The translations under genes were made by a program, and so were the position numbers. Positions 16,001 to 43,171 of a stretch of DNA of 64,000 bases are shown here, piece after piece; positions within the stretch are counted from its first letter, which is position 1, and every line of letters starts with the position of its first letter. The DNA comes from Oculina patagonica (lineage: Eukaryota). Under the pieces are notes generated by a model. The model was given only the letters and a program-made list of their open reading frames with translations, did no database searches and was not told where the DNA came from. Where the stretch lies: NCBI RefSeq assembly GCF_052425735.1, contig NC_135763.1, positions 31,000,001 to 31,064,000 on the forward strand, given 5' to 3'.

Positions 16001-19000
16001 GTGTCCAAAAATATTCACATTACTTACTTGTGCAATTGAGACCCTGCTGATCATTATACTTTCCATCTGGACAGGCTGAAATGGAATAAAAAAGAACAAA
16101 GCTGGTATTCGTATCTGTTACACTGCCTCGTCCGCGGAGGAACCTGAATCACCCCATGATGTTTGTAATGATACTAGATGGATTATTCTTTCTATATCCG
16201 ATAAATAGAAACCATGTCTTCCCGATTAAAGTTGAGAAATGGAAAATGTAATATTTCTAGTAATATCCTCAGTCAAACGTTAGTATCAGTCATGCCTGAT
16301 ATTTAGGCTTTACCAGCACTTATTGGTAAACTTTAAATCACCTATTGGCAAACGTCCCCGAAATGAATTGTAGGCTCCAGGTGTGGTCTAAATCAAACAT
16401 TGAGAATTCCACAACTTATTATCCTCACGACGTGAACAACATATAGTTCGTACCGTCTTATGGTAATGTCTATTTTTCTGAATAGAGACATGTGCAGCAT
16501 AATGTATACTGGCAGTTCCGTTGGCTGTTAGTATATGTTTTACTGCACCAGCTCTAGCTATGTTTTCCAGCCTCATCCCATACATGGCGTTCGCTATTTC
16601 TTCAGGTCAACTTTATCTTGCCTGGGTAACACGCTTGAGCGCTAAGCTACGCCGTGCTGATGAGACCCATGGAAATCGAAACAGGTCGATCAGCCATGGT
16701 GGGTAAAAAAGGTATTTCACCTTAACTGCCGAAAATTTTCAAAATTTAACACACCTTCGCATGTTCCGTGAACATTCCGCATGTCCTCCTTGCAAACGCA
16801 TTTTCCTCCAAGTCCACTGATGTTCCACTGGCCATTACTCTTACAGTGAACATACATACTTCCTGCTTCTTGCACGGCATCTTCGTTACAATATCCTTCA
16901 ATTCGAATGGATTCTGAATCATTTGCTGGAGATACAGTCCTTGGTAGCGTCACCAAGCTGTTGCTGAGTGTTTCACCTGCGCAAACGTTGTAAGTGACTT
17001 CCACAGAGTACAGAACATTACAAGCTCCATAATTGTGGAATGCTAATAGAACATACTTTCCCGTAATGTGGAAATTTATTGTTGCAAAAGTTTGTTTATT
17101 GATAGGCTGTTTAATTTCGGCCACTTTTTCATACGCTGCAGGGTTATTAAGAGGGTTAGGATATTGACCTGGTTCTGCCCAAGGCTGATAGGACTGGCTT
17201 ACATACAAGTCAAACATATCCACACAATAAGGTCCTCCATTGGTCGGTGAGAATGTAGAACAACTTGTGATGCGGTACCCGATAGTGATGTCAATCCTGT
17301 TAGCTTCACTGACTGCGATTTGATCACTAATTAGCCAACTGTTTGGTTGGGGATCCGACTGTGTTAAGCCGACATCACATGCTGTATATCTAGGTAGTTG
17401 TTTCGGAAACTTTACCTTCGTCTTTCTCTCCCACTGCAAAAATTTAAATTCCAAAACAAACAAGCAATGAATAAATAAACATCGAAAATAAAAAAAATTG
17501 TCATTCTACTTGTCTATTCAGTAAGTAATATATTTTGTTCTGAGTTTGCCTCAACCATTCTCAGCAAGATTGAAAGACTCTCAGTGACACGGTGGCTATA
17601 AATGTTTTCAGCGTTTTAATGACAACCAAGCATTTACAAAACTTTGAGGACTTTTAAAGAAAAGTAAATAATCAACGCAGTCAGAAAAATCCAACCCTGG
17701 ATAGCTGGGTTAATAGATGTATAAATAAATTCATAAACAATTCGCTTGTTATGGACGGGTCAGCAAGTAAGGCTGCATTAAAGTTTACAGGGAGCGAAAG
17801 AAAATTAAGAAACGGGCTGAAAGACTAGATAGTTCGTTAGTTAGTTTTTGATCTTTCATTGTATTAGTTTTATTTACATTTTTACATTTTTGAGTCTAAT
17901 GCTTGCGTGCGCTTTGCGCATGCGCATTAGACTCTTTGTTATATGAAAAAAGCTGTTAGCAATCCCAAGGGAATGGTTCGGGATCGATAATCGTTCGCTG
18001 TAATGTAGAAAACAATGATCAGCTGCAAGAACGGACTCCGTACGGACACGCACGATTAGTTTCAATTAAAAACAGCCAATCAGCGACACGTGTTCCCACG
18101 CATAATTAAAAGTTCTTTCTCAAGTCACGATTATTCAACACTTGAACAGGACGAAATAATTTTCCAGTTAAGACATTTGTAAGCTTTTTGTGAAATAAAT
18201 CTTCGTTTTCAGTTCAGTTAAGCACTTGTGTTTTCGTCTTGCTTAAAAAGCAAGACGTCTTTGAGAAAAAATATTTCGACGGCGACTCGCGTTTATTTAC
18301 ACAATGCGACCAAATATTTATTTTGTTTTAAAAAATAGAAAACTTTACCTCGGTTTTTGTATTTAAGTCATTCGAATTTTGACCAATTTTTTCTTTACAG
18401 TGCAAACAAAAACCTTCAAAAATAAAAGATGTACATGGATAAATGTAAATCAAGTTACGCGACTAAATCAAAATGCGTTTGTTTGGCCGCTTTGCAGTAT
18501 TACACTGTCCCGGCCTTTGCCATACACTGAAATCGAATTTCATGCTTTTACGACTCTCAGAGATCTTAAGTTCTTCTTACAGCTAGAAAAATCATAAAAT
18601 GGTTACATTGATATGGAAGTGATGATTCGCGAAATTTGTACATCATGATAAACAGTCTTCGCTCCTGTGTATGGTAGCTCGATAATAATTGCCTAGTTTC
18701 CAGCGTTCAAAAGGTCATCATTATATTGACGTGAGCATTTACACCCGTTTTTAGGAAAATCTGTCACTAAGTGCTTACAGTACAATGGAGTAACAGTCAC
18801 TATTTCAAGTGCTTTTATTGCAAAATCTGTTTCAAGAGTCATCATCAAAATGGTGAAAAATCTGAAAGAAAACGATGTGAAGTTCTTCAACCCTTGTTGT
18901 AATGAACATGCTTTTTGTAAATCGTCACGCAATCTTGTCCAAATGTTTAATCGTTTCTGCTTTTACGGACAATACGGAAGAAGTAACATCAGCTCCTGTT

Positions 19001-40400: not shown

Positions 40401-43171
40401 CTGTTTTTAGCGTAGATTTTAAAAGTGTAATTGGAAAATGGAGAAAGATCTGCTACAATCACTTTCTTCGCGTTCAATCCTTCCTTATATGGTATGTAAC
40501 TGACACCAATTTTGCAATAATCCTCCACGCACATTTTATCACTGTCACATGGCTTACGACATTCGACGTCATAATACACGTCAGTGTGATCACCAGTTAT
40601 TTCAGGAAGTACCCATGTTATCTCGACTGTACTTTGGTTAACGAATGCAATAGTGACATTCCTCGGGGCTGATGGTAAAACTGGAAGCAAAAAATGCCGT
40701 ATTTAATGCAAGATTGTTATATTGACGCGACCAAGAATTTAATTTGGTTTGCAAAACAAAGTAAAGATGAATTATAATTAATCAGCCATTGCGTTCTCTA
40801 AGCAATCTTTATTCCAGGAGAAGACTTCTTTAATTTTAATTCTTAAAAAAAGGTCATTGCAATGTGTATGTCAACAATAATGAAATTACTTACTTGTGCA
40901 ATTGAAACCCTGCTGATCATTATACTTTCCATCTAAACAGGCTGAAATGGAATAAAAAAGAACAAAGCTGATATTCGTATTTGTTCCACTGCCTCGCTTG
41001 AGGAGCCTGAATAACCCCATGACGTTTGTAATGATATTAGACGGATTATTCTTTCCATATCCGATAAATAGAAAAAATGTCTACCCGATTAGAGTTGAGG
41101 AATGGAAAATGTAATATTTCTAGTAATATCAAACGTTAGTATCAGTCATGCCTGGTATTTAGGCTTTACCAGCACTTATTGGCAAACGTCCCCGAATTAG
41201 GATGCAATCTTCATGCAAAAAAAAACCCTTGCTGTGTACATTGTAGGCTCCAGGTGTGGTCTAAATCAAACATTGAGAATTCCACAACTTATTATCCTCA
41301 CGACGTAAAACAACATATAGTTCGTACCGTCTAATGGTAATGTCTATGTTTCTGAATAGAGACATGTGCAGCATAATGTATACTGGCAGTTCCGTTGGCT
41401 GTTAGTATACGTTTTACTGCATCAGCTATAGCTATGTTTTCCAGCCTCATCCCATACATGGCGTTCGCTATTTCTTCAGGTCAACTTTATCTTGCCTGGG
41501 TAACACGCTTGAGCGCTAAGCTACGCCGTGCTGATGAGACCCATGGAAATCGAAACAGGTCGATCAGCCATGGTGAGTAAAAAAGGTATTTCACCTCAAC
41601 TGCCGAAAATTTTCAAAATTTAACACACCTTCGCATGTTCTGCGAACATTCTGCATGTCCTCCTTGCAAACGCATTTTCCTCCAAGTCCACTGATGTTCC
41701 ACTGGCCGTTACTCTTACAATAAACATACATACTACCTGGTTGTTGCACCGCATCTTTGTTACAATATCCTTCAACTCGAATGGATTCTGAATGATTTGC
41801 TGGAGATACAGTCCTTGGTAATGCCACGAAACTGCTGATAAGTGTTTCATCTGGGCAAATGTTGTAAGTGACTTTCACAGAATACAGAACATTACAAGAT
41901 CCATAATTTTGGAATGCTAACAGAACATATGTTCCTTTCATTAGGACGTTTATTGTTTCGAAAGTTTGCACATTGGTAGCCTGTTTAATGTCTGCCACTT
42001 TTTCATACGCCGCTGCATTATTGAGAGGGTCAGGATAGAGAGACGTGTCTGCAATCAACTTGTCAGACTGGTTTACATACAGGTCAAACTTGTCCACACA
42101 GTAAGGTCCTCCATTGGTCGGCGAGAATGTAGAACAACTTGTGATGCGATACTCGATCGTGATGTCAATCCTGTTAGCTTCACTGACTGCGATTTGATCA
42201 CTAATTAGCCAACTGTTTGGTTGGGGATCCGACTGTGTTAAGCCGACATCACATGCTGTATATCTAGGTAGTTGTTTCCAAAACATTACCTCCGTCTTTC
42301 TCTCCCACTGCAAAAATTTAAATTCCAAAACAAACAAGCAATGAATAAATAAACATCGAAAATAAAAAAAAATGTCATTCTACTTGTCTATTCAGTAAGT
42401 AATATATTTTGTTCTGAGTTTGCCTCAACCATTCTCAGCAAGATTGAAAGACTCTCAGTGACACGGTGGCTATAAATGTTTTCAGCGTTTTAATGACAAC
42501 CAAGCATTTACAAAACTTTGAGGACTTTTAAAGAAAAGTAAATAATCAACGCAGTCAGAAAAATCCAACCCTGGATAGCTGGGTTAATAGATGTATAAAT
42601 AAATTCATAAACAATTCGCTTGTTATGGACGGGTCAGCAAGTAAGGCGGCATTAAAGTGTACAGGGAGCGAAAGAAAATTAAGAAACGGGCTGAAAGACT
42701 AGATAGTTCGTTAGTTAGTTTTTGATCTTTCATTGTATTAGTTTTATTTACATTTTTACATTTTTTAATATTCTATTGTATTAGAGTGATTTCAGTTAAC
42801 CCATGAAATAGTTATTACACTTTTAGATACTCTTAGACACAAATTCCATTGTTTTCTTTTGTTTCCTTTCGACTATTACTACGCACAAACTGGTAGATAT
42901 TGTTTCACGGGTTAAGTGAAATCACTCTAGTTTTTATTTAGATTTTTACAGTTGGTGTGATACCTCCGACCTAATTAAGTGTAGATGTAGATGTAAAGAC
43001 ATCATACTAACGATTGACACTTACCCCTAATAACCCAGGCTGATCTTTTACAATCCAATGCCAATCGTGATTCTTTGTGTTTTCTAGGACCACTTGAATT
43101 GATGAGGCCAAAGCAGCAAACGTCACGGTGGTAAAAAGAAAAGTCCAAAACGGCTGCGTGTGGCCAGTCAT
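31482..43171 (-). CDS. Receptor tyrosine kinase gene 2, same architecture as gene 1 (~811 aa)
   Basis: Exons 43025-43171, 41629-42307, 40894-40941, 40324-40680, 39971-39985, 37834-37863, 37035-37140 (TM), 36757-36830, 35640-35819, 35178-35288, 34476-34663, 34218-34337, 33886-33956, 33369-33409, 32605-32701, 32221-32320, 31482-31553. Exon lengths match gene 1 exactly and the kinase motifs are intact. Several N gaps lie between 37949 and 39690. Confidence 0.9.
33095..33215 (+). mobile_element. Degenerate tRNA-derived SINE fragment (also ~50140-50260; related minus-strand fragments near 12350-12450 and 36080-36190)
   Basis: B-box-like gaggtcacgggtttgaat followed by gccctgattttttt; no intact tRNA cloverleaf. 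Confidence 0.5.
36301..36455. repeat. Gene 2-specific insertion with ~10-bp tandem repeats (GGGCGATTTT-like)
   Basis: Absent at the gene 1 site ~12590; flanked by tccgaaat/tctgaaat. Confidence 0.6.
37206..37250 (-). ncRNA. Penelope-type minimal hammerhead ribozyme motif (gene 2 intron)
   Basis: Identical to 13354-13398. Confidence 0.6.
41629..42307 (-). CDS. Gene 2 exon: Eph-receptor-like ligand-binding domain + sushi
   Basis: Paralogous to 16755-17433; same length (679 nt) and conserved cysteines. Confidence 0.85.

What the first reader, a model, noticed from the sequence alone, without database searches (positions are those of the whole stretch)
16755..42307. Ligand-binding exon is hypervariable while its flanking introns are almost identical
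Seen: my hand alignment of the gene 1 and gene 2 LBD exons gives ~45 substitutions in 226 aa, in clusters ([64 protein letters not shown]). The adjacent introns (17434-17880 vs 42308-42760, and 16370-16754 vs 41245-41628) differ at only a handful of bases, and the FN3 exon at ~4 of 119 aa. A second cluster sits at the mature N-terminus ([16 protein letters not shown]). Some variants are shared patchwise with gene 3: gene 2 shares NQSD, PDPLNN and SVKV..CPDETL, while gene 1 shares NNPAA and QPIN. Inference: an exon more diverged than its introns points to diversifying selection and/or exon-limited gene conversion, the pattern seen in immune and allorecognition receptors. The array may be a variable self/non-self or symbiont-sensing system.
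Basis: partly seen in the sequence, partly recalled or inferred. Interest (0 to 1): 0.85.

Follow-up and report, generated by a model that had tools for sequence, protein, structure and literature searches.

The report
Old tract inside young coral Eph-receptor duplicates
Two neighbouring coral Eph-type receptor genes are nearly identical except for a ~450-base stretch of the ligand-binding exon that is as old as the whole gene family, which points to a recombination or gene-conversion mosaic and not to fast adaptive change.

Summary
The ligand-binding (LBD+CRD) exons of gene 1 (16755-17433) and gene 2 (41629-42307), both on the minus strand, differ at 83/679 nt and 45/226 aa. The flanking introns differ at 3/447 and 8/383 aligned bases, and the FN3 exon differs at 4/121 aa.

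The excess is not an amino-acid effect. It sits in a tract-like core (codons 50-200), where dS is 0.40 and 10/52 four-fold sites differ, against 1.3% in the flanking introns. The exon ends have dS = 0. In the core, dN/dS is 0.35, and both dS and dN/dS match those of any other pair in this five-member subfamily.

So the exon core is old and the flanks are young. This is a mosaic made by unequal crossing-over and gene conversion among tandem paralogs. A statistically supported 44-nt patch shared by gene 1 and the upstream paralog g0 shows that such conversion acts in this exon.

Selection against homogenising the two sets of binding loops, a "peak of divergence" as in opsin and RH genes, remains possible but unproven.

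This is a new member of a known kind and of moderate interest.

The parts
16755..17433 (-). Gene 1 exon 2: Eph ligand-binding domain plus Cys-rich (CRD) start, 226 codons + 1 nt
   Evidence: Pfam PF01404 + PF25599. PDB phmmer hits to EphA2/A4/B2. AF2 model with pLDDT 87 and Foldseek match to the EphA2 ectodomain at TMq 0.75. AG/GT splice sites.
41629..42307 (-). Gene 2 exon 2, homologous LBD+CRD exon
16834..17286 (-). Gene 1 old core tract (codons 50-200). g1-g2 dS is 0.40 and 10/52 four-fold sites differ. It contains the loop after strand 73-81 (H-I position; codons 79-101 = 17131-17199) and the J-K-equivalent segment (codons 109-126 = 17056-17109).
41708..42160 (-). Gene 2 old core tract (codons 50-200)
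17287..17403 (-). Gene 1 exon 2 codons 11-49, identical to gene 2 at every base. Encodes the D strand, the D-E loop and the E strand.
17404..17418 (-). Small diverged patch at the start of exon 2 (codons 6-10, KVKFP/EVMFW): 4 nonsynonymous differences. The model has pLDDT <50 here.
19480..19626 (-). Gene 1 exon 1 (signal peptide plus LBD N-terminus, ending ...[11 protein letters not shown]|GTAAGT). 7 of its 10 differences from gene 2 cluster at 19492-19519.
43025..43171 (-). Gene 2 exon 1 (...[11 protein letters not shown])
17434..17885 (-). Gene 1 intron 1, proximal part: 99.3% identical to 42308-42760 and part of the youngest g1-g2 block (11 mismatches in about 1200 non-coding nt across 16630-19981)
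17886..19206 (.). 1.3-kb insertion in g1 intron 1, absent from g2. A 99.4% identical inverted copy lies at 53150-54481. It has no long ORF and is probably a young non-autonomous mobile element.
16077..16754 (-). Gene 1 intron 2. The part next to the LBD exon (16370-16754) is 97.9% identical to g2. The distal part (about 16003-16413) is indel-rich and about 10% diverged.
16023..16076 (-). Gene 1 EGF-like exon (approximate bounds); g2 equivalent 40889-40942; 2/18 aa differ
15353..15715 (-). Gene 1 first FN3 exon (approximate bounds); g2 equivalent 40319-40681; 4/121 aa differ, dS 0.026
4072..13294 (-). Gene 1 TM exon (13169-13294) and tyrosine-kinase exons (12041 down to 4072). The [18 protein letters not shown] and DFG motifs are intact.
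31500..37150 (-). Gene 2 TM and kinase exons. The 3' part (below about 33800) is closest to gene 3 (about 4.8% non-coding divergence), not to gene 1.
60264..60911 (-). Gene 3 LBD exon, an old paralog: 76.5% nt identity to both g1 and g2
37949..39690 (.). Five N gaps with short islands of (CCTA)n-like repeat, in the g2 intron between the FN3 and TM exons. A homologous gap in g1 lies at 14117-14827. Left unfilled.

Best explanation
The window holds three tandem Eph-type receptor tyrosine kinase genes of a stony-coral-like anthozoan, on the minus strand. Their layout is LBD, CRD, EGF-like, FN3, TM, kinase. A fourth paralog, g0, lies just upstream of the window.

Gene 1 and gene 2 share a young block covering the 5' half of the gene plus upstream DNA. 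Non-coding divergence there is 0-6%, with a mean of 3.8%, and is lowest (about 0.9%) right around the LBD exon. Inside that block sits a tract-like segment of about 450 bp, codons 50-200 of the LBD exon. Its divergence at silent sites equals that between any two members of the subfamily. A smaller diverged patch of about 60 nt spans the exon 1/exon 2 junction in the mRNA.

So the exon-versus-intron contrast is a contrast of age, not of substitution rate. The locus is a recombination mosaic. It was built by unequal crossing-over (gene 2 has a gene-1-like 5' half and a gene-3-like 3' half) and by short-tract gene conversion among paralogs.

Exons are the only places where the old paralogs are still alignable. 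That explains why imported or retained old sequence is confined to the exon. Amino-acid evolution in the tract is under net purifying selection, with dN/dS about 0.35.

The functional result is two receptors with identical D-E and G-H regions but different loops at the H-I and J-K positions. Gene 1 also lacks a conserved NQS sequon. I infer from this that the two receptors prefer different ligands.

Shown: the age contrast, the mosaic structure and the purifying selection. Inferred: which event left the core old, and the difference in ligand preference.
For: Rates and silent sites:
- dS, dN and dN/dS for the whole exon are 0.25, 0.105 and 0.42.
- Codons 11-49 and 201-226 have dS = 0. Codons 50-200 have dS = 0.40 and dN/dS = 0.35. 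All other paralog pairs give dS 0.29-0.55 and dN/dS 0.39-0.57.
- Four-fold sites differ at 10/52 in the core, 0/24 at the exon ends and 11/830 in the flanking introns (p = 5e-8).
- Silent differences occur in 21/112 amino-acid-identical core codons and in 0/69 at the ends.
- Derived changes are symmetric between the copies: g1 15 synonymous and 25 nonsynonymous, g2 14 and 25.

Trees:
- Exon ends: (g1,g2) with 100% support and branches of 0.01-0.02.
- Core: g1 and g2 are still sisters (95%) but on branches of 0.10 each, close to the g0 split.

Mosaic structure:
- Run test: g1-g2 p = 0.0002; a g1-g0 identical patch covering 26 polymorphic sites, p = 0.0008; g1-g4 p = 0.0016 (sequences).
- Non-coding g1-g2 divergence is over-dispersed (chi-square p = 7e-17). 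The youngest tract has 11 mismatches where 46 are expected (p = 9e-10).
- Hybrid architecture of gene 2 and the duplicated intergenic unit.

Other support:
- Kinase exons in the non-homogenised 3' part have dS of about 0.1-0.55 (most 0.2-0.3), like the LBD core, but dN/dS of 0-0.15.
- Independent short-read contigs confirm the g1 junctions.
Against: - No donor for the core exists in this assembly. Only six alignable copies were found, and none is more than 81% identical to g1. The g1 H-I loop segment has no match elsewhere in the genome.
- A single recent segmental duplication should have copied the core too. Either an unsampled or lost donor or allele, or repeated conversion that stopped at the core, has to be assumed.
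- Divergence estimates rest on Nei-Gojobori counts from two sequences and five outgroups.
- The core tree rests on 453 nt.
- No population or orthologue data were available.
Confidence: 0.7

Rival explanations
1. A selection-maintained peak of divergence. Gene 1 and gene 2 exchange sequence by ongoing gene conversion, but convertants that erase the difference in the binding loops (H-I and J-K positions, N-terminal patch) are removed by selection. The core, with its hitch-hiking silent sites, therefore stays old while everything around it is homogenised. This is the Innan / Teshima-Innan model known from red/green opsin exon 5 and RHCE/RHD. It adds a cause to the best explanation and does not contradict it.
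For: - The peak lies over loops that line the ligand-binding face in solved Eph structures. This mapping rests on the HMMER alignment to EphA2 and the strand order in the model.
- The youngest conversion-like tract abuts the core on both sides yet stops there, and it also skips a 28-nt patch in exon 1.
- Non-coding divergence is patchy, as expected from repeated conversion.
- g1 and g2 remain sisters in the core.
- Raised silent divergence is expected under this model (PMC3924837, section 3.2, read).
- The g1 core, including its odd H-I loop, is 98.5-100% conserved in contigs of a related organism.
Against: - dN/dS in the core is no higher than in any other paralog pair.
- The silent-site profile looks like a plateau with a sharp 5' edge, as a single neutral tract would.
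- High mismatch density alone can block conversion without any selection.
- The collinear 16-24 kb unit looks like one segmental duplication, which selection against short conversions would not explain.
- No orthologue data show concerted evolution of the flanks.
Confidence: 0.3
2. Captured alleles. The ancestral gene carried two very old allelic lineages that differed in the LBD core. Unequal crossing-over between homologous chromosomes then placed both in tandem, fixing the heterozygote.
For: - It would explain an old core inside an otherwise young duplicated unit without needing a third paralog.
- g1 and g2 are sisters in the core.
Against: - It needs allelic lineages as old as the paralog family (dS 0.40).
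- Baseline g1-g2 non-coding divergence is 3.8%. That is 5-10 times the 0.6-0.8% seen between two haplotigs of another coral.
- The reads from the second individual that land on g1 match it exactly.
Confidence: 0.1
3. One reading: rapid adaptive amino-acid diversification, or targeted hypermutation, of the ligand-binding exon, as in immune or allorecognition receptors.
For: - The 45 amino-acid differences cluster in loops.
- Differing sites fall at positions that vary more across the coral family: 1.31 vs 0.94 bits, p = 0.001.
Against: - dN/dS is 0.35-0.42, and it does not exceed about 1 even in the loops.
- Silent and four-fold sites are raised 10- to 30-fold over the introns.
- There are significantly more synonymous changes than neutrality predicts (binomial p = 2e-4).
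- The g1 core is stable across individuals and in a related organism.
- Across the family, the H-I motif NQSDQFI is conserved, not hypervariable.
Confidence: 0.03
4. Assembly artefact: near-identical introns created by collapse or chimeric joining, or two haplotypes laid in tandem.
For: N gaps exist in both genes, and tandem repeats are hard to assemble.
Against: - De Bruijn contigs of the probable source run tile g1 with 0 differences. They bridge the intron 2/exon junction (16367-16833) and the exon/intron 1 junction (17334-17880).
- K-mer depth roughly doubles to triples exactly where g1 and g2 are identical.
- A g2-type contig also appears.
- g1 and g2 differ by a 1.3-kb insertion, by several indels and by a different 3' half.
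- The gaps are more than 1.9 kb away.
Confidence: 0.03

Closest known systems
Peak of divergence in duplicated genes under gene conversion: human red/green opsin exon 5 and RHCE/RHD (Innan 2003; Teshima & Innan 2008; reviewed in PMC3924837)
   Same: Tandem paralogs about 24 kb apart. The flanking introns are nearly identical, and one exon that carries functionally important residues is much more diverged, silent sites included.
   Different: Ongoing conversion is not demonstrated here by orthologue comparison. The flanks may simply be a recent segmental duplication. The peak is about 450 bp with about 40 amino-acid differences, not two key residues, and no functional difference is known.
Anti-Lepore-type hybrid genes from unequal crossing-over
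   Same: Gene 2 lies between gene 3 and gene 1. It has the 5' half of the downstream gene (g1) and the 3' half of the upstream gene (g3), and the intergenic unit is duplicated.
   Different: The junction zone (g2 about 33800-34900) is close to neither parent. The hybrid is therefore old or was reworked later.
MHC class I/II loci with homogenised introns and diverged peptide-binding exons (my own knowledge; MHC conversion is discussed in PMC3924837)
   Same: An exon more diverged than its introns, with a mosaic of short conversion patches among paralogs.
   Different: MHC binding sites show dN > dS and extreme allelic polymorphism. Here dN/dS is about 0.35-0.4, and no polymorphism was seen in the little data available.
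Lineage-specific Eph/ephrin expansions in cnidarians (Arcas et al. 2020, PMC6993872) and tandemly duplicated gene arrays in corals (Noel et al. 2023, PMC10236652)
   Same: At least 16 Eph-LBD exons in this genome, mostly on one chromosome-scale contig. More than 100 related LBD exons occur in other coral assemblies, often several per contig.
   Different: Noel et al. state that gene conversion is very rare in coral tandem arrays. This locus shows significant conversion-like fragments. A paralog pair examined in another coral showed uniform 82-85% identity in exon and intron, with no peak.

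Membership tests
Eph receptor tyrosine kinases | N-terminal ephrin-binding jelly-roll domain | tested here: met
   PF01404 at E = 8e-14 and 2e-16. phmmer hits to EphA2/A4/B2 chains. The AF2 model matches EphA2/A4/B2 ectodomains at TMq 0.72-0.76.
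Eph receptor tyrosine kinases | Cys-rich region (sushi/EGF-like) after the LBD | tested here: met
   PF25599 Ephrin_CRD. An EGF-like exon aligns to the coral homologue.
Eph receptor tyrosine kinases | Two fibronectin type III repeats | tested here: inconclusive
   The first FN3 exon hits PF00041. Second-FN3 exons are found only in gene 3 (57073-57279 and 56339-56401). In genes 1 and 2 that interval holds N gaps.
Eph receptor tyrosine kinases | Single TM helix and an intact tyrosine kinase domain | tested here: met
   A TM exon and kinase exons with the [24 protein letters not shown] and PVKWMPPE motifs, all open. PF07714 on the exon translations.
Eph receptor tyrosine kinases | C-terminal SAM domain | tested here: not met
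   The coding sequence ends ...[17 protein letters not shown], at the same point as the 878-aa Montipora homologue P0014, with no SAM-length tail. Many non-vertebrate Eph-like receptors lack SAM (my own knowledge), so I call these genes Eph-type and not canonical Ephs.
Eph receptor tyrosine kinases | Binds ephrin ligands | not testable with these tools
   Needs binding assays. The segment between the I-position strand and strand L is about 13 residues shorter than in EphA2, by the HMMER alignment and the model. Canonical J-K loop contacts may therefore differ.
Peak-of-divergence paralogs under gene conversion (opsin / RH type) | Local peak of divergence, silent sites included, within low-divergence flanks | tested here: met
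Peak-of-divergence paralogs under gene conversion (opsin / RH type) | Independent evidence of ongoing conversion (flanks group by species, core by gene) | not tested
   No orthologous arrays were reachable. The best database relatives are at most 70% identical, and the metagenome scan was empty. Indirect support only: over-dispersed non-coding divergence and significant shared fragments.
Diversified immune / allorecognition receptors (MHC, Hydractinia Alr, Botryllus FuHC type) | dN > dS at binding sites | tested here: not met
   dN/dS is 0.42 for the exon and 0.35 for the core. In the loop region it is about 0.4 on the g1 branch and about 1.0 on the g2 branch.
Diversified immune / allorecognition receptors (MHC, Hydractinia Alr, Botryllus FuHC type) | High allelic polymorphism of the variable exon | tested here: inconclusive
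   Only sparse data. Four 151-nt reads from a second individual show 0 differences, one of them in the core. Contigs from a related organism show 0-4 differences over 116-261 nt. There is no sign of hyperpolymorphism, but very few samples.

The most novel reading that the evidence does not exclude
The LBD core is a selection-protected island. Two coral Eph-type receptors are kept functionally distinct in their ligand-binding loops against continuing gene conversion. That would make this the first peak-of-divergence case in a cnidarian receptor array, and it would pinpoint the residues that set ligand specificity. The ligands could be the expanded cnidarian ephrins, or the ephrin-like proteins that the coral-associated bacterium Endozoicomonas acquired from its host (PMC6993872).
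Probability: 0.3. Interest if true: 0.55.

Novelty: new member of a known kind. Interest (0 to 1): 0.35.

Why it matters
An exon more diverged than its introns must be checked at silent sites before selection is invoked. Here the contrast is one of age, not of substitution rate.

For coral genomics, this locus is a concrete counter-example to the statement that gene conversion is very rare in coral tandem arrays.

It also marks a defined segment of about 150 codons (the H-I and J-K positions plus an N-terminal patch) as the natural place to test ligand specificity in the poorly understood cnidarian Eph expansion.

It does not, on present evidence, reveal a new self/non-self recognition system.

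Tried and rejected
- **Donor search.** DNA and protein searches of the whole genome with the exon and with the 144-nt loop segment found no copy close enough to be a recent donor.
- **Orthologue and population sampling.** The 5.8-billion-protein search gave nothing above 70% identity. An exact-pattern scan of metagenome contigs found nothing. Only one read-laying run was allowed, so gene 2 could not be examined in reads.
- **Recurrence in another coral.** Paralogs P0173 and P0182 on one ENA contig are a uniform 82-85% identical in exon and intron, with no peak. At the protein level, the g1-g2 pair is the most extreme of 1711 family pairs for the contrast between exon ends and loop region.
- **Second high-divergence zone (about 16003-16413).** The g0 intron is unalignable there (40-55% identity), and much of the 10% divergence sits around indels. 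No inference drawn.
- **Standard bootstrap trees.** The run timed out and was replaced by ultrafast bootstrap.
- **Compensated frameshift as the source of the g1 H-I loop.** Looked for by eye; none is apparent (sequences).
- **Patches shared with gene 3 as conversion.** Rejected: they are ancestral states and the run tests are not significant.
- **ESM Atlas look-up.** It only repeated the Eph family assignment.

Full report
**What is there**

The window is G000:C6:31000001-31064000 of a 529-Mb eukaryotic genome. The best full-length relatives of the encoded proteins are Eph-like receptors of the stony coral Montipora capricornis (40% identity) and of Nematostella. Sequencing runs that hold the stretch include runs labelled coral metagenome.

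Three tandem genes lie on the minus strand: g1 about 4072-19626, g2 about 31500-43171, g3 about 48555-62500. Alignment to the Montipora protein and Pfam scans give this layout:
- exon 1, signal peptide plus LBD N-terminus
- exon 2, LBD plus Cys-rich start
- an EGF-like exon
- an FN3 exon
- a TM exon
- nine kinase exons with intact catalytic motifs
- no SAM domain

An AlphaFold model of exon 2 (pLDDT 87) matches EphA2, EphA4 and EphB2 ectodomains at TMq about 0.75.

The genome holds at least 16 Eph-LBD exons. Six are alignable at the DNA level: g1, g2, g3, g0 (5 kb upstream of the window), g4 (+160 kb) and g5 (11 Mb away).

**The gaps**

The N runs in g2 (37949-39690), and a homologous one in g1 (14117-14827), lie in the intron between the FN3 and TM exons. 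They are bordered by (CCTA)n-like simple repeat. The g1/g2 alignment is collinear on both sides.

The gaps are more than 1.9 kb from the compared segments and do not affect the finding. They do hide whatever replaces the second FN3 domain, which is visible only in g3. I did not try to fill them.

**Observation**

- Exon 2 differs at 83/679 nt and 45/226 aa.
- The flanking introns differ at 3/447 and 8/383 aligned bases.
- The FN3 exon differs at 4/121 aa.
- The [16 protein letters not shown] cluster sits at the end of exon 1.

**The key test**

Nei-Gojobori counts give dS 0.25, dN 0.105 and dN/dS 0.42 for the exon. The differences are not spread over the whole exon:

| Codons | g1-g2 result |
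|---|---|
| 11-49 | no difference at all |
| 201-226 | dS = 0, three nonsynonymous differences |
| 50-200 (g1 16834-17286) | dS = 0.40, dN/dS = 0.35 |

The core values cannot be told apart from those of every other pair among g0-g4 (dS 0.29-0.55, dN/dS 0.39-0.57).

Two cleaner measures agree:
- Four-fold degenerate sites differ at 10/52 in the core, 0/24 at the exon ends and 11/830 in the flanking introns (Fisher p = 5e-8).
- Silent differences occur in 21 of 112 amino-acid-identical core codons and in 0 of 69 at the ends.

Synonymous changes are significantly over-represented relative to sites (p = 2e-4), which means net purifying selection. Polarising with outgroups gives symmetric derived changes: g1 15 synonymous and 25 nonsynonymous, g2 14 and 25.

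The exon core is therefore about ten times older than its surroundings. It is not evolving faster at the protein level.

**Genealogy**

Trees:
- For the exon ends, g1 and g2 are sisters with 100% support and tiny branches (0.012 and 0.020).
- For the core, they are still sisters (95%) but on branches of about 0.10 each, just after the g0 split.
- In codons 79-126, g1 sits on a branch of 0.31 while g2 groups with g0.

A Sawyer-type permutation test on 333 polymorphic sites gives these results:

| Pair | Longest shared fragment | p |
|---|---|---|
| g1-g2 | 55 polymorphic sites | 0.0002 |
| g1-g0 | 26 sites, a 44-nt stretch identical in g1 and g0 where g2 differs at 4 bases | 0.0008 |
| g1-g4 | 20 sites | 0.0016 |
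| g1-g3, g2-g3 | none significant | - |

So short-tract conversion among old paralogs does act in this exon.

**Larger context**

Non-coding g1-g2 divergence over the 5' block averages 3.8% but is strongly over-dispersed (chi-square p = 7e-17). It is lowest exactly around the LBD exon: 11 mismatches in about 1200 nt across 16630-19981, where 46 are expected (p = 9e-10).

Gene 2's 3' end and the downstream intergenic DNA match gene 3's 3' end and intergenic DNA (about 4.8% non-coding divergence). Gene 1's 3' half is 15-19% from both. The unit g1-5'/intergenic/g3-3' is therefore present twice.

The kinase exons in the non-homogenised part have dS of about 0.1-0.55 (most 0.2-0.3), like the LBD core, but dN/dS of 0-0.15.

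**Artefact check**

Contigs built independently from short reads of the probable source sample tile g1 with no differences. They bridge both exon/intron junctions (16367-16833 and 17334-17880). K-mer depth rises two- to three-fold exactly where g1 and g2 are identical, and a g2-type contig is present.

A second individual gives four 151-nt reads identical to g1, one of them inside the core. Runs of a related organism cover the exon but not its flanking introns, which is consistent with transcripts. They match the g1 core at 98.5-100%, including its unusual H-I segment.

There is therefore no sign of ongoing hypermutation or hyperpolymorphism, although the sampling is thin.

**Where the differences fall**

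By the strand order in the model and the HMMER alignment to EphA2, g1 and g2 are identical through strand D, the D-E loop, strand E and the G-H loop. The strand and loop names follow the standard Eph LBD nomenclature, which I take from my own knowledge.

The differences concentrate in these places:
- the long loop after strand 73-81 (H-I position, codons 82-101)
- codons 109-126 (J-K-equivalent, shorter than in vertebrate Ephs)
- a disordered N-terminal patch
- the LBD-CRD linker
- scattered CRD sites

Across 46 related coral LBDs, the differing sites are somewhat more variable than the rest (1.31 vs 0.94 bits, p = 0.001). The H-I motif NQSDQFI is itself conserved, however. g1 is the outlier (SQSYQPW) and has lost the NQS sequon. 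At the 45 differing sites, g2 matches the family consensus at 22 and g1 at 12. No other sequence in the genome resembles the g1 H-I segment.

**Interpretation**

Shown: the exon/intron contrast is a contrast of coalescence time within a recombination mosaic, and the tract evolves under purifying selection.

Not resolved: why the core stayed, or became, old. I see three options:
- **Selection or heterology.** Conversions that homogenise the flanks are not fixed in the core. Either selection keeps the two loop sets distinct, which is the known peak-of-divergence signature (PMC3924837, read), or a high mismatch density blocks strand exchange.
- **Neutral import.** After a recent segmental duplication, the core of one copy was overwritten from a donor that is not in this assembly.
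- **Captured alleles.** Two old allelic lineages were placed in tandem by unequal crossover between homologues.

The sister relation of g1 and g2 in the core, the patchy flanks and the way the youngest tract stops on both sides of the core favour the first option. The long collinear duplicated unit and the plateau-like silent-site profile with a sharp 5' edge favour the second.

I give about 0.3 to selection-maintained divergence, 0.1 to captured alleles, and most of the remainder to neutral tract history.

**Comparison and novelty**

The genes are Eph-type receptors, and cnidarian Eph/ephrin expansions are known (PMC6993872). The exon-peak pattern is known from opsin, RH and protocadherin genes.

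What is new is the instance: a coral receptor array with clear conversion footprints, where the literature calls conversion very rare (PMC10236652). One paralog pair inspected in another coral showed no such peak, so the pattern is not general.

This is a new member of a known kind, of moderate interest.

Noticed in passing
window 31500-43171 with 44208-51035: Gene 2 is a hybrid. Its 5' half and upstream DNA match gene 1, and its 3' end and downstream DNA match gene 3 at about 95%. The junction zone (about 33800-34900) is close to neither. This is the layout of an anti-Lepore-type unequal crossover.
   Followed up: partly
window 17886-19206 and 53150-54481: A 1.3-kb insertion in g1 intron 1 is absent from g2. 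A 99.4% identical inverted copy lies inside gene 3. It has no long ORF and is probably a recently active non-autonomous element.
   Followed up: partly
window 20127-28388: The intergenic DNA upstream of gene 1 holds about 8 kb that the gene 2 copy lacks. It is built of a 2-kb tandem duplicate (24276-26253 vs 26249-28228, 99.7%) and inverted copies (20127-21445 vs 27091-28388 and 25117-26247).
   Followed up: no
window 6412-7241 vs 8300-9410: Inverted repeat arms of about 97-99% identity lie inside the large g1 kinase intron (between the exons at 9611 and 5435).
   Followed up: no
window 14117-14827 and 37949-39690: The N gaps fall at the same homologous intron position in g1 and g2, bordered by (CCTA)n-like repeat. 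Second-FN3 exons are detectable only in gene 3 (57073-57279 and 56339-56401). Whether g1 and g2 have a second FN3 is unknown.
   Followed up: partly
L007+L008 (G000:C6:30980001-31000000): Paralog g0 has exons 1-4 like g1 and g2. The kinase-like hits downstream of it are much more distant (for example [30 protein letters not shown]). g0 may be truncated, or it may be followed by a different kinase gene.
   Followed up: no
window 13169-13294 vs 37025-37150: The TM exon shows 5 nonsynonymous and 0 synonymous differences between g1 and g2 (4/42 aa). The numbers are too small to test.
   Followed up: no
window 17056-17131 (codons 102-126) and alignment: The segment between the I-position strand and strand L is about 13 residues shorter than in human EphA2. 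The J strand and J-K loop that form part of the ephrin channel in vertebrate Ephs are reduced in this coral family.
   Followed up: partly
L012 vs L013 (ENA ERZ25067872 contigs): Two contigs of another coral assembly carry the identical LBD exon with flanks 99.2-99.4% identical. These are apparently haplotigs and give an allelic-divergence yardstick of about 0.6-0.8%.
   Followed up: partly
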